A stretch of DNA of 64,000 bases, taken from the NCBI GenBank assembly GCA_003693705.1, contig RBZT01000680.1, forward strand, positions 1 to 64,000. The letters run 5' to 3'. This DNA is from Polymyxa betae A26-41. Taxonomy: Eukaryota; Protista; Endomyxa: Phytomyxea. How positions within the stretch are numbered: position 1 is the stretch's first letter; each line of letters opens with the position of its first letter. This document shows positions 7,101 to 48,952 of the stretch, in pieces. The translations under genes were made by a program, and so were the position numbers. Under the pieces are notes generated by a model. It ran no database searches. It saw nothing but the letters and a program-made list of their open reading frames with translations, and had not been told where the DNA came from.

Positions 7101-7758
7101 GAAAAGAAGTGCAGACAGTGAAAAAGGACAGTACCTCCAGAGTCTTTTGTAGCACTCTAAACTTTTCATTATATTGAGCCCCACATGAATCATCCTCGCC
7201 TGAAACGCCAGCGTCTTCTGTGTTACTGTAATTCCGGCTAATAAGACTAGGGTACTTTCAGCCGGGGTCTAAACGTTGTTTTCAAGATTTTAAGCCTTGA
7301 GAATCTTTCTTTACAGACTAAGCGAAAAGAGCTAAGGAACCTAATTCGAGTATGATTTACTAATCCCGATTGGTATACGTGGTATTTAATACCATCTACG
7401 GAGTTGGGAGTCAAATTTTGCGCTCCATACTAATTTTCCTTACATAGTATTATATACCATCTAAGACCTGAATTTTTAACGGTTGTTGCCCTAACTTCTT
7501 GTGATTAATTTTTGAGATAGATTCGCGGTCTTTTGACCAATGCTCCTAAACTTGTCTGAATTTTGCAATCACCGTACAAAAGTGCGAGATTTTTCGTTGT
7601 TTCTGTCTACTATACCGGGTAACGTAACGTAAATGTAACGTAATACATCTCCGGTTCAATTATGACTAGAAGTAGTGATATATTACTGTGTACCAATCGA
7701 TCTTTACGTCGTTGTTTGACATTGTTTGCCGTCGGTCTAGCACTCAATTGACTCGAAT

Positions 7759-10729
7759 ATGGCGACTCTGGATGATTATTTTTCTGTTGACGATGACTCT
7801 TGTTCTGAAGACGAGTTCGATGTTTCTGATGAGTTAGATTGGCAATATATGACTGCAGCTCAGCTCACGAACTTTTATTTCACAGACCGTCCAGTTGACG
7901 GCGAGCTACTCACGGCAGCAGTTGGCGAAATTAAGAAGGTTTGCGTTAATGCCAAACGAATCATTTCTCCCATCTCTAGAGGCTTGATAACACTGAGCGA
8001 TTGTGCGAACTATTTCTTGGCCAGCATTTGCCCATTAGTCTTTGAAGCAGCTGAATAAGGATCTGATGCGGAAGATCCGGTGCTTGGAACTGACCAGATT
8101 TGTTTTATTCGCACCTTAGCGGCCCTATCAGTATACAAATGCACGCCTTCAAATCTGTTCGACGCCAGCAACAGCAAATTTTTCCCAGTCGCCAGTCAAC
8201 TGGACTATGCAGTCTTCAAGAAAGTTATCAAATCCCTGAAGCAGAAACGCACTGATGTATCTGAGTCATTGCATTGGGTTGTTCAATTCGGCGCTGACGA
8301 ACTTATACGAAGAGCGGAGCGCTCTTTTACTCAGGCGTCGTGCCGCGTTGCCCTCAGTCCACGTCAGACCATTTTGTCGCTGGATGATGACCAGTACCGG
8401 CTTCGATTTGTGCTTTCTGAACAAATGGGCTTTGTGAGAATCAACAATCCCAAGAAAGCATTCGGCATTGTGTCCACGAATGCAGTTTCTCTGGTTAGCT
8501 CCATGGTTCTGGGAAAGCGTCTGATCGGAAAAGCAGAAAGTTTCGATATCGTCGTTCGAATCATCTTGATGTGGATGCAGGGCGTTGATATTTCGGAGCA
8601 CGTTCGAACTTCTGACGATTTGATCTGCCTGGATAGAGGATATTTCGGCACTTCTTTGATCGCATTCTTGATGAAATGTGGGTTTGCCCCCATTGGGACT
8701 CATAAGCGTGTTAACTCTTACCCATTCACTTTCGGCGACGCCAGGAACCGTAACATCCGGCGATTGATTGAAGAGGTGGGCTGCAAAAGCATTTATGTGG
8801 CGAAGAAAAAGTTCCACGATCGACATCTATTCCCCTTTTCATACCGATCGGGAAAGGGCCGTGTGGCTTCATTGATTTGTTCCAATCCGCGCCTAGGTTG
8901 GGGTTGGCGGGTGCTTAAAACATTGCTGACCTTATAACAGACGTGTAGATCTATCGGAACAAACCCGCCATGATGACAGCACCAGATTTGCATCCCCTTA
9001 TTCGTAATACAGGGAGGTTTCGAATGGCATGCTGTTCGAGCAGGATCTTCTCTTGTGACTTCAACAGTCGCCTATGAAGAACTCTGTCATTATAGATCTC
9101 AAGCACAGCCTGAAGAGCAAATCACATTTTCTGCAATTGGAATGCAAGCGTTCCAGGAAGACACCTCAGCAATTGGAGACGTTTCTTCCCTGTGAACCAA
9201 ATCTGCAGCAGAATTGAAGCAGATGCTGCGTGAGCGATCGATGCAGCTATCCGTTTATATGGAGGCATTGATTGAGCGCCTGCTGAACGCCCCACTTCGT
9301 CCGGTAAACGTAATCACACGCCTGATGAAAAAATGGTTCATGAAGCGGACCAACAATTCGTTCCTAAAGCTGGGAGGTGCCAATGAGATCTACATTCTTC
9401 GAGCCATTCCAGCATTTTTCGCCCTGTTTGGAGAAGGATTCAATTTGTCGGGGTTTCCTGTGCAAAAAGGCCTTTTAAAGTTGAATAGGCATAATTCGCC
9501 GTCGTTCTTGGCCACCTCCATTGATGGCTGTGCAGTCTTCAAGAATTCGAATGATGAGGGCCAGCGTCTGAATTCGTGTCAATCATTGAATTCAAAACAG
9601 CGACGACTGCTTCCACTCAGGCAGAGGCCAATGCGAGAATGTCATCGGCCTAGTCTCTAGAACAGAATCCCAACCGACGTCTGTTCCGAACTCAGATAGG
9701 AACCAACTTGATTCAGCTCCTTGTCTGGACGCCTCAGTACAGGGCTCAAGTTTTGCATCACGTAGCGACCACTGGAGTTCCATGCTGTCTCTTCGTGGTA
9801 GCCATCTTGTCCACCATCGTTTATGCGGTGTTTGTCGAGTTCGCTGACGATCTTTGTTGGTTTATGAAGAGTATTTGAAGCGAGAACTGTACTCAGCTTT
9901 GACGCAATTCCACAGCTCTCCAAACGCTTATTTACCTGCATCGAGCGACTTTGGTCACGCCGTTGATTTAGACACTCCTCTGATTTGGAAGAACATGGCT
10001 AAGGCTTTCGTAAGGGATGGGCTTCGCCCACCGGCCTCTGATGTTGTGCCATATTGTGTCTCAAATTGGAATCATTGTAAAGGCGGCCAGGACGTCTGCT
10101 CAAGAATCTTAAAGAATGTCAAAGTGGATTTCCGGAAACTCACCCCGAAAGGATTCATTTGGATCCGGTTCATATTGACCGCGCTGTTGAATGATCATAT
10201 GCTGCTACGAATGTTGGAGATTGAGCCCGACCTTGATAGGTTTGACTCATACAAGGCTCTTAAGCAAGCTTTGAACCATCGGAGATCGTTCTTTCACTTC
10301 TTACGGGACTTCTTCGATGCCTGGCGGCCTGACTTGACATTTGTACGCAGGCGTTCCGATGTAGCATTGTTTACACAGCAGCAGGATCTTGATGAAAACA
10401 ACAATGGAACAGAGAGCCAACCTATGCCAAAACCTCCCTAAAGGAACCGTTTGTAATGGCTGCAGTCCGCCGAAGGTATGCGGCGTCGATTATCCAGCGA
10501 CCCACACCATCGTGGCTCGAGACAGAAACGCTGTTTTGTTTTGTGCCAAGAAACCACAACTGTTTTCTGCAAAGCATGCGATGTTAACGTATGTGGAAAC
10601 CCTGCCTTTGGATTGCGAAAGTCCTGCTGGGACAAGCTCCATACCCGTCAGAATCTGGAAGCAGTGGAGAAAGAGAAGCTTCCAGGCAACAAGGGACGTC
10701 GGGGACGATCAAATCCCATACAATTGTAG
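7759..10729 (+). pseudogene. piggyBac-like DDD transposase with embedded SAP-like and YqaJ/lambda-exonuclease domains and a C-terminal Cys-rich finger (disrupted)
   Basis: D1 ILSLDDD...NNPKKAFGI (~8383); D2 ICLDRGY...IGTHKR (~8632); YqaJ motifs QGGFEWHAVR..VTST (~9010), LGGANE, GLL..FLATSIDG (~9500), IEFKT (~9588), YRAQVLHH..TG..CLFVV (~9740); D3 WNHCKGGQD (~10091); RCFVLC..FCKACDVNVC..CWDKLH; several stops and frameshifts. Confidence 0.8.
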
Positions 10730-10874
10730 ATGGTATATAATAACATAGAATGGTCCTGGCAACGGGGTTCTCCTATAACAAACGCGATCGACAAAAGTGA
10801 GTTTTTTTCTACGAAAAATCACCGAAAAGCAATTTTTTTCTTGTTGGGGTTGCTTGCTATATGTGCACAGGTTT

Positions 10875-11089
10875 TTTTAGGTATCCGGACGAGAGAGCGA
10901 ACCACAAGTTAGGCGAACGAGGAACAGATACCGCTATTGACGGCCACGAAGGTAATATATGACAAGACACCCCATTGAAATTTCTGCCGCTAGGTCCGTG
11001 GCGCAGTCCGGACCCCAGCAGCCACGAGGTAGGGAGACCAAGCTCTCCCGACCTCTGGACTCTCACTCTTCTATCTCGCGTGCATTTGC
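10875..11089 (+). repeat. Ngaro split direct repeat A1
   Basis: Near-identical to 15079-15293 (TTTTAGGTATCCGGACGAG...CGCGTGCATTTGC). Confidence 0.92.
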
Positions 11090-11098
11090 ATCATCACC

Positions 11099-12170
11099 AT
11101 GCCTGTTACCCGGACCTCCAAGGCTAAAGCCCTTGTCTCCTCCAAGGCGCAAGCCTCCAGCCCTAACAGCATGGGGGATGCCTCCTGGGAGGCATCGGAC
11201 TACAACGATTCCTCCTCCCCTTCACAATCACAAACCGCAGCCAGCAACCACTCCTCCAGCTCCGAGAGTGCTAATGAATCCACCAGCAGCGATCCACCTC
11301 CTCCTTCATCCTACAACTCCCCCGCTCCGCCGTTCTCTGTTACCGACATTCAAGCCATCATCGATAAGAACAACGCGCGAATGGAGCAAAATTTTCTGAA
11401 GAGAAAAAAAGCCAACCGGGAGGCGGCGTAGAAAAGAGAACGCACCCTCCTTGGTGAGGTTGAAGCTCTGAAGAGAGAGCTTTCATCTAACTAGAAGACC
11501 AACCCTAATTATGGTGAGGCCTTCCTGGCTGTCAAGACTGAGGTTCGAGAATCCTAGACGGAAAGTTCGTTGATTACGCGACCCTTATGCCCTCCAACGA
11601 TTCATCGAAAGAAGACCTGCACACCGTCGTAATCCAAGGCGGCGATCAGCGCGTCCTCAAATCCGCCAACAGCCGCCGAGACGTCCCCAACCCCCTTGCG
11701 TGGTCCGAAGTCCATCAAACAGTCATCTACACCCTCGCCAAGAATAATGCCCCCCCGCTCGTACATCATCGCGATGCTACACCATTCATTGATTGTCCAA
11801 ACACGAGCCATGTCCTACCCATGGCGCGCCGTTTCAGAATACTATCAGCGTAAGCGTCGCAATGCTGAGTGTTCTCCAGGGAAATGCGCGATCCTCCTGG
11901 AGTATAACATGGAAGACGAATAGCGATTGAAGCTCAACCCCCGACTTGCCCATCGCCCCGAATCTGCTGGATCCGATCCAAAGCGCCGCCGGACGGATGT
12001 CAAGAACCGACTTCACGCTGGCTATGACGACGAAGGGCGTGAGCGATGCAAGGATCACGTCATGAAAAATTGCGAATTCGGCAACCGATGCCGCTGGAGC
12101 CATAAACCGCTCTCCAAGAAGGCTTCTGAAGCCAAGTCTTCTACTAAGCCCTCCAATTCCAACTATTACT
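11099..12170 (+). pseudogene. Ngaro gag-like ORF with CCCH zinc finger
   Basis: Ser/Pro-rich N-terminus, coiled segment, CKDHVMKNCEFGNRCRWSH; multiple stops. Confidence 0.65.
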
Positions 12171-13498
12171 TGACTATAACCACGGTAGATGCGCATACCA
12201 TTTTAACAAAAAACTTTTCCAGTTGCAGACCTATAGCGATAGATCAGAACCCTAGTCTAGTGAGCGAAGATACTAGCAAAACGAGCCCATACGACGACCC
12301 AGAAGCCGTCTTGCGATTCTCCCTACGATCAGATCGGGTTCTACTGATGGAACAAGGACTCGAAGTCCAACCATGTCTCAACCACAGCCGCTGGATTCTA
12401 GAGCTCCAGCAGCACCCAAAGCAGCAACCAGCCTCCCGGTGTTGCAACAGTATCACAGAAGGAGCAGATATCCGATACACTGGCCCGACCAATCGAACAA
12501 GAGGATGGGATTCACCGGAAAAGCATGACGATTCACGGCAAAGATTCTTCGCGACATTAACGTAAAGAGCACATGTAGGGGCACTTCGTCGGCCCCTTCA
12601 TGCGTGACTAAATTCCCTTTCCTCACTTCATGACCTGTCCAGTCTATACCGAAGCCAACCGCCTGGGTATTCGATTAGATGCGACAAAGAGGCAAAGCCC
12701 TTCGACCTGCCAGACATATATAGGATTCCAATTCGACACCGAGACGATGAGAGTCTCCATCCCTCCAAAGAAATTAGCTAAGGCAAAGGCAAAGATTTCT
12801 GAGTTCCTGCTGGCCAACAAGGCAACGATCACCCAATACCAGCTGCTAATTGGCACCCTAAACTACCTCGCCCAGATCATGCCGGCAGGCCGGACCTTCC
12901 TCTTCCACCTGCGCCAACAGGTCCGATCCTACACTATCAGGTTCTGCACCCAGCCAGTTCCCGCTTACGTCAAAGAGGATTTGCGGACATGGCTCAAGTT
13001 CATTGACTCCTGGAACGCATCATATGAGATTATTCCAGAATGCGAGAAGAATGCCTCTGATATAGGAGTATTCACCGATGCTTCAGATTGGGGAATGGGT
13101 GGCTGGAATGCCCAGACCCGAGAATGGTTTCAAGAACCATGGCCAACCACCCACCAACAAGAAAGCATCGGAGCGAGAGAGCTCCGAGCGGTCCTCGAAG
13201 CCCTCACACTTTGGGCCATGATTGGCAGGGCGCCACTGAAATTATCGACACCGATAATGAAGGCAATGTCCATGCAATGACCAACCGCCGCTCCCGAACA
13301 GACCCCGTCATCAACGACATTCTGAAGTCGATATTTTATGACGAGTTATCACACAGATGTCGCATCAAGCTCGTGCACATTGCAGGCACTACCAACACCA
13401 TTGTTGATGCACTATCACGTAACAGACACTGCACAGAGACCCTGAAAGGGAAACGCGTTCAGCGGGCTGAGAGGTTCTGCAGAGGAGAAGCCCCTTAA
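12170..13498 (+). pseudogene. Ngaro RT (catalytic core deleted) and RNase H
   Basis: ITEGADIRYTGP; LGIRLDATKRQSP...YIGFQFDT...LIGTLNY; RNase H FTDAS, ELRAV, DTDN, VDALSR; no YxDD present. Confidence 0.85.
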
Positions 13499-13631
13499 AC
13501 GCAAATCAATAAAAACGCAGAATATATGAGCAGGGCACTAATGAAACATAACATGAAGCGAAGAAGTCCCCCACGGACCTAGAATCGGAAGAGACACGAG
13601 AGAGGGAGACCAGACCCATCACACTGCTACC

Positions 13632-14827
13632 ATGAGTATAAAGAAGAGAACGCTTCCTTTCCACCTATCCAAGGAAGGGGCCAAGGCCCTAAAGAAGGCG
13701 AAGTCTATCCAGATCCGAGACACCGAGCGTGATCCAAACTACAGGAAGGACAAGTCCCTCAAGACGAACGAACTATCAAAGAGAGGTGAACAGTACCTGA
13801 AGGTCCTCAGGGATCGTAATGTCCTGGGAGACTCTGTCCTAGCCCACGAGAACCCAGGATTGGTGGAAGAGGCCAGACGAGAATTGGCTCAATCTCTCGC
13901 AACCAATTCCCTGAATGCATACATTTCCGCATGGAAGAATTTTACCAAATGGTGCGAACTTTACGGTGTTGACTACGTTAAGCCGTCGGAATCCGACCTC
14001 GTTCTGTATGTCTTCGACCAAGGCCGAAAACCCAAGGATCAGGGAGGCTTGAGATATCCAACACTGAAGAACTACCTAATGGCATCAGCCACTCTCTGAC
14101 CGCTGGATCAAAGCCCCTCAATTTGTTGGAAGAGATGCCATTACTAGAGGCAATGATGCGCCGACTCCACATCTTACACGGAGCCCAACAAGCCGACACG
14201 CGACGTCCTATTTTTCTATGGATGCTAATTAAGATGAAGAGATCCGGCATCATCAGGACCACCCTCGATATGACAATGCTATCGATCGCGCTACTTGGAC
14301 GCGAAGGACAGTACCGACTCGGGGAGATCACTGCCGACAACCACTCTTCCTCCACACACCCGACGCTCGGACAATGGACATACACACTCAGCGAAGTGAC
14401 CGCGTCCCTTACCCTCCTCGAAGGTAAGACCAACACATGGCAACTGGCCATCAAAGTCATCCATCCCATTGAAGACACCGAAGCCTGTGCCGCAAAGGCC
14501 CTTCAGAACCTGATTATCGAACGAGCCAACTGCAAGGCTACCGACCCACTATTCTCGGACGCACAGAACCGACCCATCACGCGAAAGGCGTTCACCACAT
14601 GGCTAAACAAAGCATTGAAGAGTATCGGAATCTCAGACGGACGATACAAGGGCCACAGCCTACGAATCGGTGGAGCCACAGAACTTAGTGAAATGAAGGT
14701 CGCTGACCACGTAATCCAAGCGATGGGCAGATGGCGCTCATCATGCTATACCCGCTACCGTCGAACAGACACAACCCAGATTCTGCAGACAATTAAAGCA
14801 ACCTACCGCAGGACGGAATGCAACTGA
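13632..14827 (+). pseudogene. Ngaro tyrosine recombinase (disrupted near 14097-14122)
   Basis: N-terminal SLATNSLNAYISAWKNF; catalytic YRLGE, GKT, HSLRIGGAT, GRWRSSCYTRY. Confidence 0.92.
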
Positions 14828-14995
14828 CAATAAAGGATTTCGGCAATGAACAGAACATTAATGAGCCGACTCAGTTTCGAACAGAATCCAGTTTATGATG
14901 AGAAACCAATCATAGAGACAGAGCAGACATAAAGGCAGTCGAGTAGAAACAGCTGAGCCAACGAGCGGGCGGGCAGAAAGGCCATGAAGGTTGGA

Positions 14996-15080
14996 GGGGA
15001 AAGGGCTGAGAAGATTCTCGAAACGAACGAGACCTTCGGCCCTTCCGGCCTTTCCACCCAACCGAAATGAGACATCAATT
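14996..15080 (+). repeat. Ngaro split direct repeat B1
   Basis: 85 bp, near-identical to 15362-15446. Confidence 0.92.
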
Positions 15081-15293
15081 TTAGGTATCCGGACGAGAGA
15101 GCGAACCACAAGTTATGAGAACGAGGAACAGATACCGTTATTGACGGCCACGAAGGTAATATATGACAAGAGACCCCTATAAAATTTCTGCGGCTAGGTC
15201 CGTGGCGCAGTCCGGACCCCAGCCGCCACGAGGTAGGGAGACCAAGCTCTCCCGACCTCTAGACTCTCACTCTTCTATCTCGCGTGCATTTGC
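15079..15293 (+). repeat. Ngaro split direct repeat A2
   Basis: Copy of 10875-11089, abutting B1. Confidence 0.92.
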
Positions 15294-15361
15294 CCCGTAG
15301 CCAACCAAGCCTAACCAAAAGGAATTGAATACCGATAAGCCGAATAATAATAAAAACAACC

Positions 15362-15446
15362 GGGGAAAGGGCTGAGAAGATTCTCGAAACGAACGAGGTC
15401 TTCGGCCCTTCCGGCCTTTCCACCCAACCGAAGTGAGACATCAATT
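15362..15446 (+). repeat. Ngaro split direct repeat B2 (right terminus)
   Basis: Copy of 14996-15080. Confidence 0.92.
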
Positions 15447-15514
15447 ACTATAATTTTTGTACCTAAAAAACACCTTGTGGCTAATGATTTGCTTTCAAAG
15501 TCGTACATGGTATA

Positions 15515-18016
15515 CCGTGGACTCTCTTATAATTTATAGGGTCGGTGGAGGGGTTTCGTATTAATTATAAGCGAGTATCAATTATATCTGCGTGACATTG
15601 ATACAGTAATTGCGAGAACTGCGGGGCGGTTCTTGACCCGGGTCAACGCTGCCAGAAATTGGAAGAATATCAGTCCCTTCCTCTCTCGCGATTGCTGCGC
15701 TGTGTCACCCGTGCTTGCTACATTTACAGAGCTCTCGTTGGCAGTTATGGATCGCTGTGATGTTTGTTCAGACAACGCTAGCGGGAATCATCGGTTAGTG
15801 GACTTGCTTTGCCAAAAATTGTCAGGATAACAGGTTTTCAGCTGTCCGGCTTGTGATCGACCCGTCCATCCGTTCTGTGGTGAACCATACGCAGCCGATG
15901 AAGAAGGATTTGACCAACGCATTTGGTGCTCGAAGTCTGGGAAGTGCATGCTTTCAAATCAACAGCAGCCAGAATCTGATTGGAAATTGCCCACTGATTC
16001 GGAGTTATCGTCGGATAAATCGTCCGATAGTTCATCCGATGAAAATCGTATCGTTGTCGTTAATGCGGATGTCATCTGGAAGTCCAAATCCAAATTATCC
16101 CATGAGCAACGATCCCAAATTTGGAAGAAGCATCAGGAAGCACCTGAAATGACACAGCTTAAGCTTGCTGAATGGGCGAAAGATGAGTTCCAGCTGGAAA
16201 AACTCACACAAGCCACGATTTCTACAATTTTAAAGGATTTTAGGAACTCTTCCTCGGGTGGCGGGAATTTGACGAATGAACAGGTCCACCAGATCTGGAC
16301 GAAAAGCAAGCAGAGCAAAATGAGCCAGAAAGACTTAGCAGATTGGGCAAAGAAGAAGTTCAATCTCCAGAACGCACCTTGTCAGGCGACGATATCTAAC
16401 ATCGTCAACAACAAACGTGCCATCTCTGACGCTTTGGATGATAAGACTCGCAATATCAAGCGAAAACGTGTCGTGAAATCCCCTGAGCTCGACAACATCT
16501 TGGTTGAATGGATTCTTCAACGCCAAGAAAACCGAGTGATCTTAACTTGACAACTGATCCAGAGGAAGGCTCACGAATTTGCTGATCTGTTGAAGTTGCC
16601 AGAGGACCAGCGCCCTAATTTCTCCGATGGTTGGATTGAGAAATGTTTGAACCGTCATGGTCTCAAGACCATGTTCTTTCCGGTGAAAGCGGTTCTGCCG
16701 ACACAGCAGCTATCGAAGTAGCTTTACCTGATCTTCAGAACGCAATCAAACAAATATCATCCTCAGGACGTCTTCAACATGGATGAGACCGGACTCTTCT
16801 ACTGTCTAGCGCCTGACCGGACAATTGCGACCAGACAGCTTGAGGGTATGAAGAAGGACAAAACCCGTATCAATATTGCTCTGTGTGTCAATGCGGACGG
16901 CACGGAAAATTAGAACTTCTGATTATCGGTCACGCCGCAAAACCTATAGCTTTCAACAACAAATCCGGAGAGCAGCTTGGTTTCTATTACCGCCACAACA
17001 AAAAACCTTGGATGACCTCGTTACTCTTTCAAGAGTGGTTGCAGGAGTTCGATTCTCGAATGAAGCGGCAACAACGAAACATCCTTCTTCTTTTGGATAA
17101 TGCACCTACTCACATGGTGAAGAATCTTAAACTCTTGAACGTAAAGGTATTTTCCTACCACCGAATACAACGTCGCGCATACAGCCGATGGATGCCGGGA
17201 TTATTGCTGCATTCAAGAAGCGCTACCGGTCGTTCCATTTACCTCATGCCTTAGATCGCGATGCTGCTGGGGAGAAGGATCTCTACAAAGTAGATATTCT
17301 AAAGGCAATGCGATGGTGCAGTGCGGCTTGGAATGCATTGACGCCGGACACCATTGCAAATTGTTGGTTGCACAATGGTTTGATGAATGGCGGGACAGCA
17401 TCGTCCTTGTCTGACTCGTTCGATGACAGTGAAATCGATCAGCAGTTGCTAGATCATATCGAGCATCTCAACATCTCTTCGCCTTTGTCCATCGAAGAGA
17501 TGGCAGGCCATAAGACGGACGCTGCTATTCATCATGCGTTTTCTGATACTGATATGGTAGAGCTGTTTTCTGAAGTTGCTGATCAAGAGTATGATGCAAT
17601 CGTAGATGCCAGCCCGGAGCCAGATGTAGAAGAGGTTTCTCTTGAAGACAATATCAAAGCTCTGAAACTCACTCTTAACCTTCTGGTTGATGAACCTATA
17701 GAAAATAAGGCTGCGATTCGCGAAGTCCGCAGAGTTTTACTCCGTCTCAGTAAGGAAAAAATGGAAAAAAAGCTTTGTAATCTCAAACAGAGCGATATTC
17801 GCTTTTTTATGACAAAATAAACATGATTTGAATGTGAGAAACCTGAAAGTCCCTTGGTATTTTTATGCTTATAATTAATGGTTCCTGAGGTTTTATCAAT
17901 TATGAAGTATAAGAGAGTATTAATTATAAGCCATAGAACACATTCGGTGGACGCGCTCATGATCAAATATAAGCGAGTATTATTTATAAGAGAACCAATT
18001 ATAAGCGAGTCTACGG
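15515..18016 (+). mobile_element. pogo/Tigger-family (Tc1/mariner superfamily) DNA transposon
   Basis: TIRs CCGTGGACTCTCTTATAATT / AATTATAAGCGAGTCTACGG; TA TSD; subterminal TATAAG(C/A)GAGTAT repeats. Confidence 0.92.
15948..17820 (+). pseudogene. pogo transposase: two tandem N-terminal HTH modules, CENP-B HTH, DDE_1 domain
   Basis: QxxLAEWAK..F.L...QATIS twice; LDNILVEW; FNMDETG; LLLDNAPTH; QPMDAGII; stops and frameshifts. Confidence 0.9.
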
Positions 18017-18299
18017 TATAATACCATCTACGGAGTCCGATCGGGGCTAATGTACTTGCTTTGTCGGATTGCAATCTTGAAAAAATAATGAATGAGAGGC
18101 GAATTGACATTGCACACACATCCTCTCTCCTGAGGTTAGGGCACCTCACATTGTTTCCGAACACCATGACTGAGAAAATCGGTATGTTTGCTTGAGTTCA
18201 GAGGAAAATATCATCGACCGATACTTTAATTAGGCAAGTCTGTTAATGAAGACCTTGTAAGGCTTCACAACCAGGGTCTTGGGTCTTATTTCATTTTTT

Positions 18300-19720
18300 C
18301 AAATAATACCGTACAAAATACTCCAGGAAGCGATCATGGTCCTTTAACGAATTGGCAAGGAAGTTGCTCAGCATGGCTTCGAATTCTGCTGTGATGCGAC
18401 ATCTTCTGAGAACCGAGAGCACTTGATGCACACTTATCTTCTCTTCGTTACCCAATAACAAATTTCTTCACCTGAAAAGTCTCGCTGTCTGTATTCTGTA
18501 GCCAAATTTAGAGCAGATGGCACCTGCTGTTGCCAGTAGGAAATGGCCTTGCAAACATGGGAAAACGCTTTTGGCAACCGACCACGAAACACAGTCGTCA
18601 TCCGCAGAAAAGCAAGAGGTTCCAGCAGCGGGGATTTCTCCAAAACAGTTGAGGCAAAGTCAATTTAATGCATTATCAAAATGGTCAGCCATACCTTCAT
18701 CTTACTAAAAATTATGTGCATGTAATTGCTGGATTCACCACTTGCAATTGTGAACAAGAGTGACAGGCCCCTTATTCTCCTTGGTTCCAAAACTGGTCGT
18801 GTTATGGGTGGCATCGATCGAAATCACTCTTTTGAAGTACAAATTCAAGCTTTCCCACATGGTTTGGGTCGGAATGATCAAAACAAACTCACCAATGGTG
18901 AAGCGTGATCAGATGAATCAGGAATATGGCACACTATTAGAACAATCAGTGATATCATCATTGGTTTGGGCTTCATCTGACCTTTGTAGAACAGAACGGG
19001 GATCCAGTTCTCTGCTGAAAACTTTTCAACTATTTGGTGGACAGCCAAAGCGTCATTCGATGGAACTCCGTTTCTGCGTTCCAGGCGAGCCTTGCAATTC
19101 AGTATGTCCTGGCGTGTTACCAGACGACAACTGGTGCTCTAATTAACGATGTGAACATTGTTTGTAAGCTGCCAATTCACAGTTATTTGCCTGCAATTCG
19201 CTTTCGCGAGTGCTACGATTGTTGAATTGGGCCATCATGTTTCGCAGGAGTCGCTCCACGGTTAAGCCCTGCTCAGTTCTCCATTCGATATCGTACTTCA
19301 TAGCTGCTCTCAATCAATTGTTGGTGGATGTCCGGCCGTCGGCTTGGCTACGTGTGTGAAAATCCAGAAACTCGACATTAACAGAACCGTTGGAGGAAAT
19401 TTGAGCAGTAATCAATGCTAAACAGTTGAAGTCCAACTTTGTCGATTTCGATTGCCGAACCGGGCGCTCCTTTCTCTCCCAAAGCTTAGTCCTGGCAGAT
19501 TCTTTCGAGCGGGAGCAAACGATATATAAAACAGTATCTGAATTAGCTGTTTTAACAGCACCTTTCCTATTGACAATTTACAATCATCCAGCGAATCTAC
19601 GAATTGTTCGAAATCGGTTCTGGAAAAAAAAATAAAATAATCTTTCTGAACATTTTTTTCGTGTTCGACATTAAGATGAATGACCATTTCTCTTCGTTTA
19701 GACAATGCGTGAGTGCCCAT
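18300..19720 (-). pseudogene. MULE/Mutator transposase remnant
   Basis: Minus-strand fragments HLNVEH..F..F, RLVTRQDILN, ISIDATHNT, DDC..SVFP; heavily degraded; limits approximate. Confidence 0.6.
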
Positions 19721-19789
19721 ATATCATAGAAAATCGCGGTTATTGCCAGAGGCAGAAACAGTTAAATGTTCAGCTTTATGTGTTTTGAA

Positions 19790-21744: not shown

Positions 21745-22019
21745 GATAATCAATAAATCTATTCATGATCTTCCGATTCTCCAAATCTTGATTAGAAATG
21801 CTCTCTTAATTCACTGGTCCGCCGACAGTGCTTGTCTCGATTCTGCATCGATCCCATCCATTGCCAAAAACAAAAACAATCCATAGGCAGAAGTGCCAAA
21901 TTTCGGCCTCGATCACTACTGCCATTAATGGTTGTTTGAGCACACGATTCAGAAACTGTCGATTTCACGGTCTTGATGTGATCTTCTATGGTCATTTTTC
22001 TAAAAAAAATTATCTTATT

Positions 22020-23074: not shown

Positions 23075-23199
23075 ACAGCACTTGAAAAAGTATAGGTTTG
23101 GGTCAGTTGGCGGTGAAGAGGGTCAGTTTAAACCCTTTTTCTTTACAGACAATCACTGAGTGGCAGCAAATAGCAAAGGTTTAGGTTTGGGTCTTTTGC

Positions 23200-36720: not shown

Positions 36721-36983
36721 TTTAGCTTAGGAACAAATGTATTGTTCATATAGCATACCCGCTGTGACTGGGATTCTCCTAAAAAACCTGTATTCCAGAC
36801 AAATTTAAGGATAGCATAGCAGTTACAGTGCCAGGTGGAGATGCTCGAACAAAAAATTCACCTGTTCTGGAGAATCGACCACTTCCAAAGGTTATGGTGG
36901 ATTTTTGATAACAAAAAAATCACCTTTTCATCCACGTTAAATATTAGAAAATTTACTGCGCAGACTGGGTTCACAAGCTTGTC

Positions 36984-42264: not shown

Positions 42265-44615
42265 TAGGGGAGTCCAAAGTTCGGTTAACGGTTAACCGGT
42301 TCATCCGCATCGGCGATACCTCGGATCATCGGTTCGGTTAATTCACCGGTTTAACCTCGGTTTAACCGGTTAACCACTGAAATTTCAAAATCCAAATACA
42401 CGAATCAAACTCATTAATAACCGGTTAAAATTAATAAAGTCCAAAATAAACAAATCAAACTCCGTTTTATTATTTACTTGAAATTTCCAAGCAGGCGGTT
42501 CCATGAGCGGACTTTCATCATGATTGATATATTTTCGTCTGAGAGTGAGCTACGGTCGGCACTGACGGAATCTCCACTGTCAGAGAAAGCAGATTCTGAT
42601 GCGACCGATGATCCCGGCATCATTAGCACGTCCCGAGCTAAAAGACTCAGCTTGGGGAAACGTCCGGATTGCTGTTTCCACCAAATTACGGAACATTTAC
42701 AGGAGCGATCAGGCTTCAGCGTCATCATCGCGTAGTCCTCCACTTCGTCCGTAGAATTATCCTCAGGTCCGCTGGTAGCCGTAAACAAGTTAAACGATAT
42801 GTCGGCTTTTTCATCGGAATAGATGACATAATCGTACTCGGCAACCATAATGTCTCGAATTTTTAGCTTAATTTCTACGGGGGCAACTTGACTGCTCTGC
42901 CGTGGATCTAAAAATAATGTAATAGAGGCGGTGTCATTATTCAGGTTCTGTTGATATTTCTCAAGCTTGGTCAACATTGATGAAGCAGCTTGCTTGACTG
43001 TAGGAGTTGTAAATCCTGTTGATGTAGTTCCAGCAATGGTTTCCAGGCACAGTTTTTTAAGATGCTGATATATCAAAGGTTTCATAGCGAGAGTGACATA
43101 ATTTTTCCCACTTGCTGCGTTTGTACATTGAAACGCTTATTCCAGGAAATCTTTTGATGACTTCAAAACACGCCAATTCAAATCACTCATTTTCATAGAA
43201 TCAAGCCGTTCTTTAAACTCCGCTTGATTGCAAACCGCTTCAAGAATATCACGATTTTTTAAGCAATTATCAATCATCAAGAATGTTGAGTTCCAACGTG
43301 TTTCGACATCGATATTTGGCACATTTTGAATGAAGGGTCGTCCAAAGACAACGGTGAGATCAGCATACTTTTGACGCATAAGGCCAGCTCCTCTAATCAT
43401 CTTGAGAAGGTCTTTTAGCATCGAAATTTCACGCTTGATCAGTTTTGTAGCATCAACAACAGCTCGATTGATTACGTGACAAATACAGCGGATATGGGAC
43501 TCATCTGATGAAGGGGCAGATTCAACTGTAACGTAGTATTCAAGTATGCGCGGACATTTTTCATTGCAGGAATCATTTCTCCCCCGCTGTCAGACGTGAC
43601 AGCAACGACACGAGTGTGAAGCTTGAAATCTTCAAGAACGGAGATAATCAGCTCAGAAGTAGTATGCTGATTGTGAGGAGGAGGAAAATGTTTAAATTCT
43701 AAAACAGCATTTTTCAACACCAATCGGCGTCAATCCAATGAAGAGTAATCACAAAGTAGCCCCTCATGACCCTCGATGACCATCCGTCAAGCGTCAGAGC
43801 TACGCGTCCTGGAATGTCGTTGATTCTCGAGGTAAACTTGAGTAACGATTCCTGATATTGTTCATGTAACGCGCGTCCAAGCGTGCTCCGACTGGGAAGC
43901 GAATAATGCCGATTTAAAGACTTGCAGAAAGCAACAAAAGCATTTGATTCGACCAACGAAAAAGGCTGCTTGTTATCGACAATGAATCCGATAAGGTGTT
44001 TCAGAATTGAAGCTTTGGTGTTATCGTCAACTTCAAAGGGGTCGGCAACTTGACCTGAGGCGATCAAGATGCAGTGGTTTTCGTCGCCAGTTTTTCCGTC
44101 TTGCTCAATTTTGTGTGAAACGGCCAGATGACGCTTCAGTGTGCTAACACCGGTACTGGCTGCATATGATATATGATTTTTGGTACATTGAGTGCAGAAA
44201 ACTCGTCCATCTCGTCTGTTGTAATAAGACCACACCCACGAAGAGTATGCGGAAATTTTACGTTTACGACCTGTTTTCGTGTAGCTGCTGTGTGTAGCCC
44301 TTCATTCGACCCAGATACCTGTGACGAAGCAACAATGCCGCGCTGTTGGACGGCCGATGCAGCGCGGTCCTGAGATTCAGGCTCCGATTCCGAGAGACTA
44401 CTACTGGGAGAGAACCCACTGTAATCGGTCATTGAAGAACAGAGAAAGGAGATGAATGAGAAAGAAATCGATGAAATGCCGCATGCGCAGTTTATGAATT
44501 TTTTACCCGGCTAACCGATCGGTTAATCGGTTAGGAGAAAACCATGAACTGGTTAACCGGTTCGCGCGGTTAACCGGTTAACCGATTCTTTTGAACCGAA
44601 CTTTGGACAATCCTA
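42265..44615 (-). mobile_element. Full-length hAT DNA transposon (2.35 kb)
   Basis: TIRs TAGG..GTCCAAAGTTCGGTT; 8-bp TSD GA(G/T)GGAGT at 42257-42264 and 44616-44623; subterminal CGGTTAACCG repeats. Confidence 0.92.
42474..44432 (-). pseudogene. hAT transposase with BED finger (frameshifted)
   Basis: WSYY..CTQC..LKRHL..H; ALTLDGWS; TSDSG; RCICH; ETRWNST; SVASESAFS. Confidence 0.92.
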
Positions 44616-44834
44616 GATGGAGTATATCGTAAAATCAGGGGAATATTCGTCGAATATCCAGCGCCAGTCATTAAAACACGTCCAGAATCAGGCTTATATA
44701 ATTCCATACACTACCTCCCCCAAGGCAAATTTATGCAGGAAGGTAGAAAATTTGTGAAATTGCATATGTAGAAACACCAGTAAAACCGCCCGCATCAAAC
44801 CCTGTGGGATAAATATTGGTTTTGGAAAAAAGGT

Positions 44835-45084
44835 CTACTTACTAACAGGTCCACGCACTTTCATTAATGATGCGTCTATAATGGGTAAAAATGGGTGATT
44901 TGGATAATACTTCACGAAGTTATGGATAGCACTTGGCGAAAGTTTTTGGATAATTTTTCCTGGGCACCAGGTATTTTCTAGATCGGAAGGTCCTCTCCAT
45001 TGTACCTGGTATTCAACATCAGTACAAGTTGCATTTTGTCTAGCATCACGGATTTTCTCAACCTGTTGATTAGACATGTCATAT
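44835..45084 (-). pseudogene. Gypsy integrase-terminal chromodomain
   Basis: VEKIRDAR..EYQVQWRG...NTW.P; joins in frame to 48957 onward once element B is removed. Confidence 0.8.
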
Positions 45085-48000
45085 CCCTAGGCCACCGATA
45101 TTAGGAATGTATACATATTATCACTCAACCGGACTTTTCTATAATTTGCGTGAACTGGGCAATAAAAAGAATATATTCTTATTAGCTTGTCACAGAATAC
45201 TGAAACGGCAGCCGTCTGTTATGAGGCCCCAGCTGATTGTTTGTATTTTTGAAGATAACATATCTGTTTTAGGATCAAAAGGTACGCTCAGCAAGATCCA
45301 TTGCCTCTCTTGACCTATTCTCTTTCCAACTGGATCCCTGCGATTCTACATTGCTAATATGGCTGGACCAGAGAGGACGTTCCTGAATGGGAGATTGTTG
45401 ACGAAGACGAATTTCTTGATAGCGCTGGTGGCCCCCGTTATAAACAGTTCCTTCGAACCATTGTCGATCGAATTTCTAGAAACTATGCGAACCGTCGTGT
45501 GGGAGCGTCGCGCAGAGAAATGGTTTTGACCGTGATCGAGCCCGCTTTCCACAGACTAGTGTCATTCTTCAACTCCGCGATGCCAGCGAGCATTCAGCAC
45601 ACAAAAGTCGCTGAATATTCGCTTTATTAGAACTGCTTTAGTGATGTCAGCTTTGAACTGTTCTTCCGACCAAAAGTTCGAGATCATGGAGGGTCTTAAA
45701 CTACCAGTTTTGGATTACGGACGACTTAAATAACTGTTAGAAAGCACCCGAGCGTACTCAGCATTGGGGAGAACTGGGTCATGGACACGTGGATGACGCT
45801 CAAGGCGACCATACACCAAAATTCATGGAGCTTGAATGGATTCGTTTGGAGGAGAGCCGACGCCGCATTCTGGACGCTGACAACGCGTGGTTTGTTGTTG
45901 ATGATGACTTGATCAGTTCAAGAGCACAAGATGTTCAAGTTAAGACTTTGAGTCAGAGGAAGGCTGGCAAGGATTGACACACAGCTTATGTCTTGGCTGA
46001 TAAGCATTCTCGTATTGGAAAAGCAAGTAAGCTACGTGTGAGAGGTGCGAAACAAGAGGAATCTGTTGATTACCTGTTCAAGCTACTGACAAACCATCAC
46101 GCTGGATCTCTTCGAAGCTGTGGTGACTCAAGATCGGGGATACGGGAACCCTGAAATTGAAATGAAAACGGTTCAGAGCGGAATGGGGTGCACCCTCATC
46201 ATGCCGAATCACCTTATGAATCACCACCCCTATGCCTGATGCCTCAGAATCACAGCTTCAGGCATCGAAGCTGCTGCCACTTTTTATAAGGCAAGGAACA
46301 ACCAATCTACTTTCGAGATCGGCCAAAGTGATGATGATCCTGACGAAAATGATGAAGTTGATGATATTGACACTGACGGAATGGCAATCGGTTTGCATGA
46401 AGTTGAATCGAAACGAAAACACGAGGTCATTCTGATAACAAATCTGGGTAATGCCAGAGCATCTTTGCTTGGGGCCGATGTTTGGGCGGCTTCGAAAAAG
46501 GTCAAAGTTGCTGGACAATCTAATGCTGTTTCAATGCAGGTATTCGCTATTGCCGTTCGCGAGCGTGACGATCAGAAAGCCTGTAAAAGATTGAGGTTGT
46601 GCATCGCGTGGCCCAGTATTCTTTAATTTTTTCACAAATGGATGACGGTTTATAATGATCTAAGCAAATGCAATGCCAATAATACTTTGTTGTTTCCAGA
46701 AGATTCTGCTGTTACGAAGACCCGGTCACGTGTAATTATTGAAGAAGCAGTTGCGGGCCTATGCGCAGACTGGTTTCAGCTGCGAAGCTATCGTTGCACT
46801 GCCACTATGGCAGCATTTCTGATTCGTCTTGACACGTTCGCTCACAGGTTCATGTCGCGTTCTTGTTCAATTAATGTTACTGACGCTCCAGATTCCGATG
46901 GCATTATTCAAATGTTTGTGAAATCGTGGTTTCATCGACACTCATCCACAGATATTATGCGAAGAGGAACGAAAATGAAGCTCGAATTGTTGAAGCCATT
47001 TCAGACCTGAGCATTGTCGACCACATCTGTGAGGTTGGCTTGATTCGACACAAGACCCTTCAATGGGCTGCAGCTTCCCCTGATGGTATAGCGATGATCT
47101 CGATTCCTACTGGGGTTTTCCCTTGTGTTGTCGAGATCAAGAGCGAGATCGTTGGCTCCAGCGTTGACGCAGCTGTTGCTGTTCGTAACAGATACGGCAC
47201 GTTGATCTACTTGAAAGTTGAGGACGATGTTTGGTGGGAAGCAATTCCTAAAGAGCATCGGGCGCAGCTGCTGCATCAGGTATGGAGATGGGTGAGATTA
47301 TCATTGACGTGATCCTGTAACAACATGATCTACAAGTTTGTGTCTCTGAATTCAACTACTTTATCTACTGCAAGGCTCGGGAAACATCTCCAATCTATTG
47401 TGCAGTTGGGTACGTCACGTTTACTCAAAAAGATGCCTTCATCGGCGCTTTCACCAACGTGGGAAATTCTCCGCTTGACTGGACGCACACGGACGTCAGG
47501 CCCCATGATGTTGTCCTGCCGGCATGGATCGAAAATCAGACTCGGATATTCTTCGTTCGCATTATCGCTTTTGGAGAATGATTCAGGATACTGCTCAGTT
47601 GAAGGGACCATTGAAACCTGTCAAAGTCTCTAAGCACAGTGCGCAATCCCTTTATTCAAAGATGAAACGGGGAGTTGATGGTGCAGCTGACTATTTATCT
47701 CGAATATCATTCCCACTGGCAAACTTGCCTTCGAGGTTAAATTCGTGCTGAGGTCGGTAATTATGGTTGTCATCAACGCATGCATCGCATACAGAATGCA
47801 TAGATGACGAGATTTGGTTGATAGCGGTGATAAATTCCCAAACAGATTGCTGAATAATTGTTAACGATCTGTGGCGAGAGTCGAATATGTATCAGATTGT
47901 ATATTCAAGGCCGGTAAGGAATTGCTAGTCTCTGCCCCAACTGTACCGCCTCCAAACGCTGATGTTTCGACAAGTGAATCTACATAGGCACGCGGCTCGT

Positions 48001-48952
48001 TGACAAAAAAACAGGTGGCGTTATTGCAAGCAAAGATTCCAATCAGGGAACCTTTGAAATTTTTCAACTCTCAGGACGGGCAACTCTTACGAGATTCACG
48101 AGGCAATCACGTTCCCATTATGAACGCAACCGACCCAAAGACAAATAAGCCGTATACTCGTGGCAGAAGATGCGTTTCGTGCGTTCGGGAGTTAAATCGT
48201 ACTGTACCACCTGTCGCCAGTTTATGTGTGCATCCGTCCTAGGCACTCAAAGCACAGCCTGCGCCGTTACGCTCCACCGACGAAAGAAGTTGGCCTCGAC
48301 GAGAGATACAACTCGTCAAAAACGAAAGTATTCGATTTCGGATGAGCAACCATAAAATCGACTGCAACGTCGTCTGAAATTGTCAGATTCGAATGCAGAC
48401 CAGGAGGCAAATCTTGCAGATGATCGAGATCGAACAGTTGGCGATTCTAATGATCAACTGTCCGATTGTTATGCAGATATTGTTGACGGGGAGCATGCCA
48501 ACCACGTTTCTCACACTTTTGGAGTCGAGGCGAGTACACCCTCTTCACAATGGCCAGACGGGGCCAGAGAATCATGAATATTTTTCTTAGACCGGTTCCT
48601 AGCACGGCATCCAGGGCATGAAATCGCCACTATGCATCGTACTCGACATTTAAGTGACGAGCCTAAGAAGATTCAACGGCATTTTCTAACCTTAGATTTC
48701 AGAAAAAGGGCTTTTGAGATAATAAGAATATAGTCTTAATAAAGAAAATCTCCGATGTGAGCCCTATCAATATTCAAAATCAATTTATGAAGCAACCGAC
48801 AGGGCAACAGAGAATATGTTTTGGAACTGAGCTGGGGAGAGCATTGCAGCCATCACCCAAATAAAAACCGAGTTGATAACGCTGTTTACTCGCTTGTACA
48901 GCATTCCAAATTGCTATTCGGAATATATTGTTAAGATCTCCGTGGCTTAGGG
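45085..48952 (+). mobile_element. piggyBac-like element B encoding a DDD transposase-YqaJ exonuclease fusion (3868 bp)
   Basis: TIR CCCTA(G/A)GCCAC(C/G)GA(T/G)AT; TSD ATAT at 45081-45084 and 48953-48956; excision restores host frame IIKQLQYDMSNQQVEKI. Confidence 0.88.
45359..48355 (+). pseudogene. piggyBac-like DDD transposase with embedded YqaJ domain and C-terminal Cys-rich finger (disrupted)
   Basis: FVVDDD..RKAGKD (~45900); TQDRGY (~46130); ADWFQLR..TAT (~46770); MRRGT.NE; GL..AASPDG (~47080); VEIK; HRAQLLHQ; YSKMKRGVD (~47670); RCVSC/YCTTCRQFMC..C...H. Confidence 0.8.

What the first reader, a model, noticed from the sequence alone, without database searches (positions are those of the whole stretch)
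7364..48952. Two diverged piggyBac-like transposons whose transposase has a YqaJ/lambda-type exonuclease inside the DDD catalytic core
Seen: elements A (7364-18046) and B (45085-48952) show no obvious DNA similarity by eye but share a colinear protein layout. The order is acidic N-terminus, D1 (LSLDDD / VVDDD), D2 (LDRGY / QDRGY), a full PD-(D/E)XK YqaJ motif set (EW..R..T, G..NE, S(I/P)DG, E(F/I)K, Q(V/L)LH), D3 (KGGQD / KRGVD), then a Cys-rich finger. Both have CCC-type termini and 4-bp TSDs. Established: canonical piggyBac transposases have this D1/D2/GGVD layout, an insertion domain between D2 and D3, and a C-terminal Cys-rich domain, but no nuclease. To my knowledge YqaJ nucleases accompany ISL2EU and some Kolobok elements, not the interior of a piggyBac core. 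Inference: this is a distinct two-active-site transposase lineage. Nuclease catalytic residues survive in both distant copies, which suggests they were under selection while the elements were active.
Basis: partly seen in the sequence, partly recalled or inferred. Interest (0 to 1): 0.92.

Follow-up and report, generated by a model that had tools for sequence, protein, structure and literature searches.

The report
PiggyBac-type transposons with built-in exonuclease
Two dead jumping genes in this window belong to a widespread, unannotated branch of the piggyBac family whose cutting enzyme carries a complete second nuclease, of the phage lambda exonuclease type, inserted in the middle of its catalytic core.

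Summary
A (7364-18046) and B (45085-48952) are decayed DNA transposons with CCC...GGG inverted ends. Their 4-bp target duplications (CTAA, ATAT) are proven by uninterrupted paralogous sites. A is a 3.7-kb element swollen by two nested, unrelated elements.

The pieces of both map in order onto a profile of 34 full-length relatives (about 1000-1400 aa; Plasmodiophora, Chromosphaera, many metagenome contigs). That profile hits the solved piggyBat and piggyBac transposases in three colinear stretches (E 3e-10, 5e-7).

A confident AlphaFold model of an intact relative (pLDDT 86) matches piggyBac at Z 25.3 across residues 90-931. Its residues 460-799, between the second and third catalytic Asp, match lambda exonuclease at Z 15.1. 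Both active sites are near-invariant across the 34 relatives.

Open reading frames run straight through the junctions, so the nuclease is neither a separate gene nor a nested insertion. Pfam misses the architecture, and I found no paper describing it.

What the nuclease does is inference. The likeliest role is 5'-3' resection of the excision break or trimming of the 4-nt overhangs.

The scan had already noted these same two elements in an overlapping window, not on other DNA.

The parts
7360..7363 (.). Element A, left copy of the 4-bp target duplication (CTAA)
   Evidence: three uninterrupted paralogs carry one 4-mer here.
7364..7404 (+). Element A left end: 10-bp terminal inverted repeat (TCCCGATTGG) and a subterminal quasi-palindrome with an 18-mer shared with the right end
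   Evidence: (D5). Homologous to the left end of the C474 copy.
7741..8055 (+). A: acidic N-terminal region of the transposase (profile 15-101); ends in a stop
   Evidence: E 5e-7.
8059..8934 (+). A: piggyBac-type DNA-binding/dimerisation region and first part of the RNase H-like core, with D1 (LSLDDD 8374-8391) and D2 (CLDRGY 8626-8643)
   Evidence: E 3e-64, profile 120-384. These profile positions align to D1/D2 of piggyBat.
8977..9192 (+). A: nuclease motif I (W..R....TST, 9019-9072)
   Evidence: This part of the profile matches the N-terminus of LHK-Exo 3syy.
9196..9657 (+). A: SAP motif (9208-9285), nuclease motif II GGANE (9373-9387) and motif III ATSIDG (9511-9528)
   Evidence: E 2e-23.
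9558..9875 (+). A: nuclease motif IV IEFKT (9585-9599) and motif V YRAQVLHH (9738-9761), reached by a frameshift
9848..10438 (+). A: return to the piggyBac core after a second frameshift. Holds D3 (WNHCKGGQDV 10067-10096) and the C-terminal helical region.
   Evidence: E 2e-43. Profile 783-873 aligns to piggyBac 433-534, including KGGVD.
10457..10726 (+). A: C-terminal Cys-rich finger
   Evidence: E 2e-14. This profile region aligns to the piggyBat Cys-rich domain.
10875..15446 (+). Nested, unrelated tyrosine-recombinase retroelement (split direct repeats, CCCH finger, RNase H trace, phage-integrase domain). Not part of element A proper.
   Evidence: D1, D2; Phage_integrase, E 2.6e-9.
15521..17918 (+). 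Nested, unrelated pogo-type transposon (HTH plus DDE_1) inside A's right subterminal repeats
   Evidence: I3; DDE_1, E 2.6e-19 and 4e-10.
18019..18046 (+). Element A right end: shared 18-mer and terminal inverted repeat (CCGATCGGGG)
   Evidence: Homologous to the right end of the C474 copy.
18047..18050 (.). Element A, right copy of the target duplication (CTAA)
45081..45084 (.). Element B, left copy of the target duplication (ATAT)
   Evidence: (I3).
45085..45098 (+). Element B left terminal inverted repeat (CCCTAGGCCACCGA)
45891..45908 (+). B: candidate D1 motif (FVVDDD). Motif and order only.
   Evidence: The profile score is not significant.
46126..46143 (+). B: D2 motif (TQDRGY)
   Evidence: (weak, E 0.06). 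Conserved in the C998 copy.
46768..46806 (+). B: nuclease motif I (DWFQLRSYRCTAT). No SAP follows it.
   Evidence: The gap to motif II is about 50 aa, against about 100 aa in A.
46884..47309 (+). B: nuclease core with AASPDG (47070-47087), VVEIKS (47127-47144) and HRAQLLHQ (47256-47279)
   Evidence: E 1.6e-16; YqaJ, E 0.014, below threshold.
47659..47682 (+). B: D3 motif (KMKRGVDG). The 89%-identical C998 copy reads KGGVD here.
47988..48352 (+). B: C-terminal Cys-rich region in two frames
   Evidence: E 2e-3 and 6e-5.
48939..48952 (+). Element B right terminal inverted repeat (..TCCGTGGCTTAGGG)
48953..48956 (.). Element B, right copy of the target duplication (ATAT)

Best explanation
Shown. 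A and B are dead copies of cut-and-paste DNA transposons from a deep, unannotated branch of the piggyBac superfamily. An intact element is about 3.7-3.9 kb. It has short CCC...GGG inverted ends, 20-23-bp subterminal palindromes and one gene of about 1000-1100 aa.

The protein has the piggyBac layout: an N-terminal DNA-binding/dimerisation region, an RNase H-like DDD core and a C-terminal Cys-rich finger. After strand 5 of the core, where piggyBac has its small insertion domain, the chain leaves the core. There it forms a complete lambda-exonuclease/YqaJ-type PD-(D/E)XK nuclease of about 340 aa. It then returns for the helix that carries the third Asp. In lineage A a SAP DNA-binding motif sits inside the nuclease; lineage B lacks it.

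The DDD core makes piggyBac-style 4-bp staggered insertions. Targets seen are TTAA (two copies), CTAA and TTAC in lineage A, and ATAT (two copies) in lineage B.

Inferred. The nuclease is active, because its catalytic residues are invariant. It probably acts as a 5'-3' exonuclease on the 5'-phosphorylated 4-nt-overhang ends that piggyBac chemistry creates. My split is as follows.
- About 45%: it resects the donor flanks after excision. The break is then repaired by homologous recombination from the sister or homolog, which restores the element, instead of by the seamless ligation of canonical piggyBac.
- About 25%: it trims the 5' overhangs on the excised element, so that non-TTAA 4-mers can be used as targets.
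- The rest: some other role, or no catalytic role.
For: - Ends and duplications.
- Colinear mapping of A and B to the family profile.
- Profile against solved structures: piggyBat E 3.2e-10 and piggyBac E 4.6e-7, each in three colinear stretches covering D1/D2, D3 and the Cys-rich domain. Also LHK-Exo (6e-4), mimivirus R354 nuclease (0.011) and SAP domains.
- AlphaFold model of the intact relative P0001: pLDDT 85.8, pTM 0.80.
- VIA alignment: piggyBac 6x67_C Z 25.3 (382 aligned, model 90-931); piggyBat Z 23.4; Tn5 about Z 16; lambda exonuclease Z 15.1 (203 of 228 aligned, rmsd 3.4, model 460-799); LHK-Exo Z 14.1. Foldseek gives the same order.
- ESM Atlas by shape: the three best matches are PF13843 piggyBac-derived clusters.
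- Conservation in 34 full-length relatives: D1 28 of 30 aligned, D2 32 of 33, D3 34/34. Nuclease W470, G584, N587, E588, S635, D637, E658, K660, R709 and Q711 are all 34/34.
- Uninterrupted frames across both junctions.
- A TIR-flanked copy in Plasmodiophora brassicae is intact apart from one frame change, probably a short intron.
Against: - Pfam does not reach threshold for DDE_Tnp_1_7, zf-Tnp_2 or YqaJ on any window piece or own-genome ORF. PF13843 finds nothing in this genome. Only 3 of 34 relatives give even weak hits to each of these families.
- The fold evidence comes from a relative that is 42-47% identical to A's pieces, not from the window copies, which are broken.
- B's D1 and D2 are supported only by motif and order.
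- Nothing here tests nuclease activity, polarity or substrate. The functional split is inference from piggyBac chemistry and from lambda exonuclease.
- The target 4-mers rest on six insertions.
Confidence: 0.87

Rival explanations
1. The DDD core is not piggyBac proper. It is an independent IS4/IS1380-like eukaryotic lineage, effectively a new superfamily, that shares 4-bp targets and CCC ends by convergence or very deep ancestry.
For: Pfam PF13843 fails on the window and on the whole genome. Identity to solved piggyBac transposases is only 14-15%. Tn5 and bacterial IS4/IS1380 transposases also match the fold. Several target 4-mers are not TTAA.
Against: piggyBac and piggyBat stand well above Tn5 (Z 25 and 23 against 16). 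Sequence-profile hits go to piggyBat and piggyBac only, and include the KGGVD-type D3 motif and the Cys-rich domain. TTAA flanks two copies in this genome. The B-lineage copy on C998 reads exactly KGGVD. The best Atlas shape matches are PF13843 clusters.
Confidence: 0.1
2. The nuclease segment is a separate gene or a nested insertion of another element that merely lies between two halves of a piggyBac gene.
For: The window copies are broken exactly in this region by stops and frameshifts. Seen alone, they would allow this reading. A does contain two true nested elements elsewhere.
Against: Continuous ORFs cross both junctions in two other copies in this genome and in many full-length relatives from other organisms. 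No repeats or duplications bound the nuclease segment. AlphaFold packs it as one confident chain, pTM 0.80. The same order holds in the two lineages, which share no DNA similarity.
Confidence: 0.02
3. The lambda-exonuclease-like domain is a catalytically silent scaffold or DNA-binding module that simply replaces the piggyBac insertion domain.
For: No activity was tested. Insertion domains at this position in other transposases are structural. The SAP motif points to a DNA-binding role.
Against: All metal-binding and catalytic positions of the PD-(D/E)XK site (E588, D637, E658, K660) and motifs I and V are 34/34 invariant at 18-37% overall identity. That is not expected of a scaffold.
Confidence: 0.08

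Closest known systems
Canonical piggyBac superfamily transposases (Trichoplusia ni piggyBac, PDB 6x67/6x68; piggyBat, PDB 9c0f)
   Same: DDD triad in the same order and with the same motif types (LSLD.., D..Y, KGGVD-like). Best fold match, Z 25.3 and 23.4. C-terminal Cys-rich finger. Short CCC...GGG ends, 4-bp duplications (TTAA in two copies) and palindromic subterminal sites.
   Different: About 340 extra residues forming a lambda-exonuclease-type nuclease (plus SAP in lineage A) between D2 and D3, where piggyBac has a roughly 60-aa insertion domain. The protein is about twice as long. The Pfam model does not detect it. Targets include CTAA, TTAC and ATAT.
KolobokE lineage of Kolobok transposons (PMC9587614)
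   Same: A eukaryotic DDD/E transposon with TTAA duplications that carries a PD-(D/E)xK lambda-exonuclease-like nuclease.
   Different: There the nuclease lies downstream of the transposase domain, not inside the catalytic core. Kolobok has RR...YY termini and a C/DxxH signature, and belongs to the hAT/P/MuDR-like group. Here the termini are CCC...GGG and the fold is piggyBac/IS4-like.
ISL2EU transposons (PMC4122938)
   Same: A DDE transposon associated with a YqaJ-type exonuclease.
   Different: In ISL2EU the YqaJ protein is a separate ORF. The transposase is PIF/Harbinger-like, with a THAP domain.
Lambda exonuclease, LHK-Exo and YqaJ viral recombination nucleases (PDB 3sm4, 1avq, 3syy)
   Same: The fold (Z 14-15, about 90% of the chain aligned) and the conserved motif set G..E, S.DG and E.K, plus an N-terminal W..R..T(S) motif.
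   Different: Here it is a domain inside another enzyme, split by a SAP motif. It has no partner annealing protein. Its oligomeric state is unknown. Pfam YqaJ scores are below threshold.

Membership tests
piggyBac superfamily | RNase H-like core with a D, D, D triad and a KGGVD-type third motif | tested here: met
   Profile-to-PDB alignments place D1, D2 and D3 on piggyBat and piggyBac D1, D2 and D3. In the model they sit at the end of strand 1, after strand 4 and at a helix start. Conservation is 28/30, 32/33 and 34/34. The motifs are present in A and B. The C998 copy of B reads KGGVD.
piggyBac superfamily | Overall fold closest to solved piggyBac transposases | tested here: met
   6x67_C: Z 25.3, rmsd 3.7, 382 of 478 aligned. 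9c0f_C: Z 23.4. The next family, Tn5, scores about Z 16. Foldseek gives E 8.5e-8. The top Atlas shape matches are PF13843 clusters. Tested on the relative P0001, not on the broken window copies.
piggyBac superfamily | Pfam DDE_Tnp_1_7 (PF13843) above its gathering score | tested here: not met
   No hit on any window piece or own-genome ORF. No hit in the whole genome. Among 34 relatives, 3 weak hits, best E 1.4e-6.
piggyBac superfamily | TTAA target-site duplication | tested here: inconclusive
   A 4-bp duplication in every case. It is TTAA at two copies in this genome (C474, C607). It is CTAA at A, TTAC in P. brassicae and ATAT at B and at the independent C998 copy.
piggyBac superfamily | Short terminal inverted repeats beginning 5'-CCC and ending GGG-3' | tested here: met
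   Seen in A, B, C474, C607 and the P. brassicae copy.
piggyBac superfamily | C-terminal Cys-rich DNA-binding domain | tested here: met
   Profile 920-990 aligns to the piggyBat Cys-rich domain. zf-Tnp_2 gives weak hits in 3 of 34 relatives. Cys and His columns are near-invariant. The domain is present in A and B.
Lambda exonuclease / YqaJ (PD-(D/E)XK) | Fold of the lambda exonuclease core | tested here: met
   3sm4_B: Z 15.1, rmsd 3.4, 203 of 228 aligned. 3syy: Z 14.1, rmsd 2.9, 180 of 194 aligned. Both fall on model residues 460-799.
Lambda exonuclease / YqaJ (PD-(D/E)XK) | Catalytic motif set: acidic residue of motif II, D of S.DG, and E.K | tested here: met
   E588, D637, E658 and K660 are 34/34. 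Present in A and B. B's motif II is read only across a frameshift.
Lambda exonuclease / YqaJ (PD-(D/E)XK) | Pfam YqaJ (PF09588) above its gathering score | tested here: not met
   Best E-values are 0.014 (B piece), 0.054 (L007), 0.02 (P0050) and 0.0062 among the 34 relatives. All are below the 22-bit cut-off.
Lambda exonuclease / YqaJ (PD-(D/E)XK) | 5'-3' exonuclease activity that depends on a 5' phosphate | not testable with these tools
   The only hint is a conserved Arg (33/34) in motif I, which aligns to the N-terminus of LHK-Exo.
SAP domain | Pfam SAP (PF02037) above threshold | tested here: met
   E 2.3e-7 in the own-genome ORF L016; 15 of 34 relatives match. A's own SAP stretch (9208-9285) matches the family profile but not Pfam alone. 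B has no room for it.
Kolobok (KolobokE) | RR...YY termini and hAT-like C/DxxH signature (PMC9587614) | tested here: not met
   The termini are CCC...GGG. The fold is piggyBac/IS4-like, not hAT-like.

The most novel reading that the evidence does not exclude
A widespread, so far unrecognised clade of piggyBac-superfamily transposons has a second, active nuclease built into the transposase core, and that nuclease changes the outcome of the piggyBac reaction. It would either resect the excision break, so the donor copy is restored by recombination and the cut-and-paste element becomes in effect replicative. Or it would trim the 4-nt overhangs, so the element is freed from TTAA.
Probability: 0.35. 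Interest if true: 0.85.

Novelty: new variant of a known kind. Interest (0 to 1): 0.72.

Why it matters
piggyBac is one of the best-understood eukaryotic transposases and a major genome-engineering tool. Its hallmarks are seamless excision and strict TTAA targeting. Here a natural branch of the same enzyme carries a conserved lambda-exonuclease-type nuclease at the insertion-domain position.

- It shows that the RNase H core tolerates a 340-residue enzymatic insert.
- It offers a natural test of how end processing shapes donor repair and target choice.
- It adds a third, independent case, after ISL2EU and KolobokE, of DDE transposons recruiting this nuclease family. That points to a general selective advantage.

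The family is large. At least 466 clusters at 50% identity match at E up to 0.001, though the weakest may share only the nuclease domain; 200 match at 1e-10. It occurs in plasmodiophorids, an ichthyosporean, probably oomycetes, and many metagenomes. Databases label its members only 'hypothetical' or 'SAP domain-containing'. Naming the family would therefore improve annotation of protist genomes.

Tried and rejected
- Pfam on every window piece and on own-genome ORFs gave nothing above threshold except SAP.
- PF13843 against the whole genome gave nothing.
- The search for homologous proteins with P0001 returned only four proteins because of its word index. The exhaustive HMMER search was the useful one.
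- A nuclease-only profile against solved structures gave only weak sequence hits to LHK-Exo, R354 and lambda exonuclease, E 1e-3 to 0.3. The nuclease identity therefore rests mainly on fold and motifs.
- The automated TIR/TSD scan gave one pair on L018 (CAAT) that does not enclose the gene. I rejected it as chance.
- The metagenomic copy L039 has clear ends, but its flanks read ATAT and ATAG, so its duplication is ambiguous.
- L038 ends before its right terminus.
- The look-up of sequencing runs returned coded organisms and no RNA holder. I make no statement on expression and did not use read laying.
Broken copies were searched piece by piece.
- No intact copy was found in this genome among at least 20 loci.
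- I could not search Repbase or Dfam, so an entry there cannot be excluded.

Full report
**What is at the coordinates**

The window is eukaryotic repeat-rich DNA; its longest ORF is 302 aa.

Element B (45085-48952) has 14-bp inverted ends beginning CCC and ending GGG, flanked by ATAT on both sides. It sits in the integrase/chromodomain part of an LTR retroelement. A diverged uninterrupted copy of that retroelement (L028) aligns to the left flank up to the ATAT. It aligns to the right flank starting from the ATAT, so the two alignments overlap by 4 bp. This proves a 3868-bp insertion with a 4-bp duplication.

Element A (7364-18046) has ends TCCCGATTGG and CCGATCGGGG, flanked by CTAA. Three uninterrupted paralogs of the surrounding short repeat (C834, C9, C559) carry a single 4-mer at the site.

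About 7 kb of A is foreign. A tyrosine-recombinase retroelement with split direct repeats lies at about 10875-15446. A pogo element lies at about 15521-17918. A's own segments are colinear from terminus to terminus with a 3723-bp relative on contig C474. That relative has perfect CCCCGAACGG ends and TTAA on both sides.

**The protein layout**

I searched every stop-to-stop piece against a profile built from 34 full-length relatives.

- A's eight pieces hit profile positions 15-998 in strictly increasing order, with E-values down to 3e-64.
- B's eight pieces hit positions 286-1006, also in order. Only its nuclease piece is strong (E 1.6e-16); the rest are weak.
- B's G..NE motif exists only across a frameshift.
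- B's D1 is motif-level only.
- A second B-type copy on C998, 89% identical in DNA, keeps QDRGY, ASPDG, VEIK and QLLH. It reads the canonical KGGVD at D3.

**One gene, or pieces of several?**

This genome holds at least 20 decayed loci of the family, and none is intact. Two of them have single open frames that run from just after D2 through a SAP motif, the nuclease, D3 and, in one, the Cys finger. These are 593 aa on C607 and 524 aa on C476.

An exhaustive HMMER search with the 593-aa ORF found 466 clusters at E up to 0.001 and 200 at 1e-10. Many are 1000-1400 aa long. Named members are a Plasmodiophora brassicae 'SAP domain-containing protein' and two Chromosphaera perkinsii proteins. The rest come from metagenome contigs, mostly 3-6 kb long. 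The nearest ESM Atlas cluster is eukaryotic, with oomycetes commonest.

The P. brassicae copy is TIR-flanked (CCCTGGC...), has a TTAC duplication, and is open apart from one frame change, probably a short intron. The nuclease is therefore an integral part of the transposase.

**What the domains are**

Pfam alone sees only SAP. DDE_Tnp_1_7, zf-Tnp_2 and YqaJ each give sub-threshold hits in 3 of 34 relatives. PF13843 finds nothing in this genome.

The family profile against all PDB sequences gives:

- piggyBat 9c0f at E 3.2e-10 and piggyBac 6x67 at E 4.6e-7, each in three colinear stretches that put D1, D2, D3 and the Cys-rich domain in register;
- LHK-Exo (6e-4), the mimivirus R354 nuclease (0.011) and SAP domains for the middle of the protein.

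An AlphaFold model of the intact relative P0001 (1074 aa; 42-47% identical to A's pieces and to the own-genome ORFs) is confident, with pLDDT 85.8 and pTM 0.80. Its matches are:

| Match | Z | Detail |
|---|---|---|
| piggyBac 6x67_C | 25.3 | rmsd 3.7, 382 of 478 aligned, model 90-931 |
| piggyBat 9c0f_C | 23.4 | |
| Tn5 transposase | about 16 | |
| lambda exonuclease 3sm4_B | 15.1 | rmsd 3.4, 203 of 228 aligned, model 460-799 |
| LHK-Exo 3syy | 14.1 | |

Foldseek and the Atlas shape search agree.

In the model, D258 ends strand 1, D341 follows strand 4 and D833 starts a helix. After strand 5 come a four-stranded segment (392-434), then the nuclease (about 455-800), then the D3 helix. This is the position of the insertion domain in piggyBac, as I know it from the published piggyBac structure; I did not compute that mapping here.

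**Conservation**

In 34 full-length relatives that share 18-37% identity with P0001, D1 is kept in 28 of 30 aligned sequences, D2 in 32 of 33 and D3 in 34/34. The nuclease positions W470, G584, N587, E588, S635, D637, E658, K660, R709 and Q711 are 34/34. Both active sites have been under purifying selection.

**Targets**

Every duplication is 4 bp. In lineage A the 4-mers are TTAA (C474, C607), CTAA (A) and TTAC (P. brassicae). In lineage B they are ATAT at B and ATAT next to the independent, 5'-truncated C998 copy. Six insertions are too few for a rule. They do suggest a TTAA-like but relaxed preference in lineage A, and possibly ATAT in lineage B.

All lineages carry 20-23-bp palindromes just inside both ends. 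These are plausible binding sites for the Cys-rich domain, as in piggyBac. That is inference.

**How it most likely works**

Shown: a piggyBac-type DDD enzyme that makes 4-bp staggered insertions, with a conserved PD-(D/E)XK nuclease in the same chain.

Inferred from published piggyBac chemistry, which leaves 5' four-nucleotide overhangs on both the donor flanks and the excised ends, and from lambda exonuclease, which degrades the 5'-phosphorylated strand 5' to 3':

- About 45%: the nuclease removes the complementary overhangs of the donor break and resects it. Repair then goes through homologous recombination and restores the element.
- About 25%: it trims mismatched overhangs on the excised element, allowing non-TTAA targets.

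Nothing here tests activity.

**Comparison and novelty**

ISL2EU encodes YqaJ as a separate ORF (PMC4122938). [quoted passage not shown] I found no paper that places such a nuclease inside a piggyBac core. Repbase and Dfam could not be searched.

I file this as a new variant of a known kind. It meets the tests for the piggyBac superfamily on fold, triad, termini, Cys-rich domain and 4-bp duplication. It fails the Pfam threshold and departs from strict TTAA.

The scan's earlier notes concern these same two elements read in an overlapping window, not other DNA.

Noticed in passing
window 10875-15446: A tyrosine-recombinase retroelement nested in element A. It has a 215-nt direct repeat (10875-11089 and 15079-15293, 95% identical), a second 85-nt repeat pair, a CCCH finger, an RNase H trace and a phage-integrase domain. 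No reverse-transcriptase domain was detected.
   Followed up: partly
window 15521-17918: A pogo-type transposon (two HTH stretches plus a DDE_1 domain split over two frames) inserted among A's right subterminal TATAAGCGAGTAT-type repeats.
   Followed up: partly
window 44835-45077 and 48947-49096, minus strand: Element B interrupts the integrase C-terminus/chromodomain region of an LTR retroelement. Many diverged copies of that retroelement exist in the genome (28 matches).
   Followed up: partly
window 7225-7363 and 18047-18300: Element A sits inside a short dispersed repeat with inverted ends (7279-7296 / 18066-18083). The repeat has 72-87%-identical uninterrupted paralogs on C834, C9, C559 and C265.
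   Followed up: partly
L041:3736-7566 (P. brassicae GCA_036867785.1 CP145414.1, about 1123835-1127665): An apparently intact, TIR-flanked member of the family with a TTAC duplication lies among ordinary host genes. It is annotated only as 'SAP domain-containing protein'.
   Followed up: partly
L038:2830-2915 and 6235-6258; L039:3142-3217 and 7068-7162; L041:3745-3812 and 7322-7550: Every lineage has its own 20-23-bp perfect or near-perfect palindrome, repeated once or twice just inside each end. The sequence differs between lineages but the arrangement is the same.
   Followed up: no
L020:2052-5273 (contig C998): A second B-type copy, 89% identical to B. It is truncated at its 5' side, and its right end abuts ATAT in an unrelated flank.
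   Followed up: partly
whole window: No ORF longer than 302 aa in 64 kb. The window looks like a graveyard of nested mobile elements, with no evident host genes.
   Followed up: no
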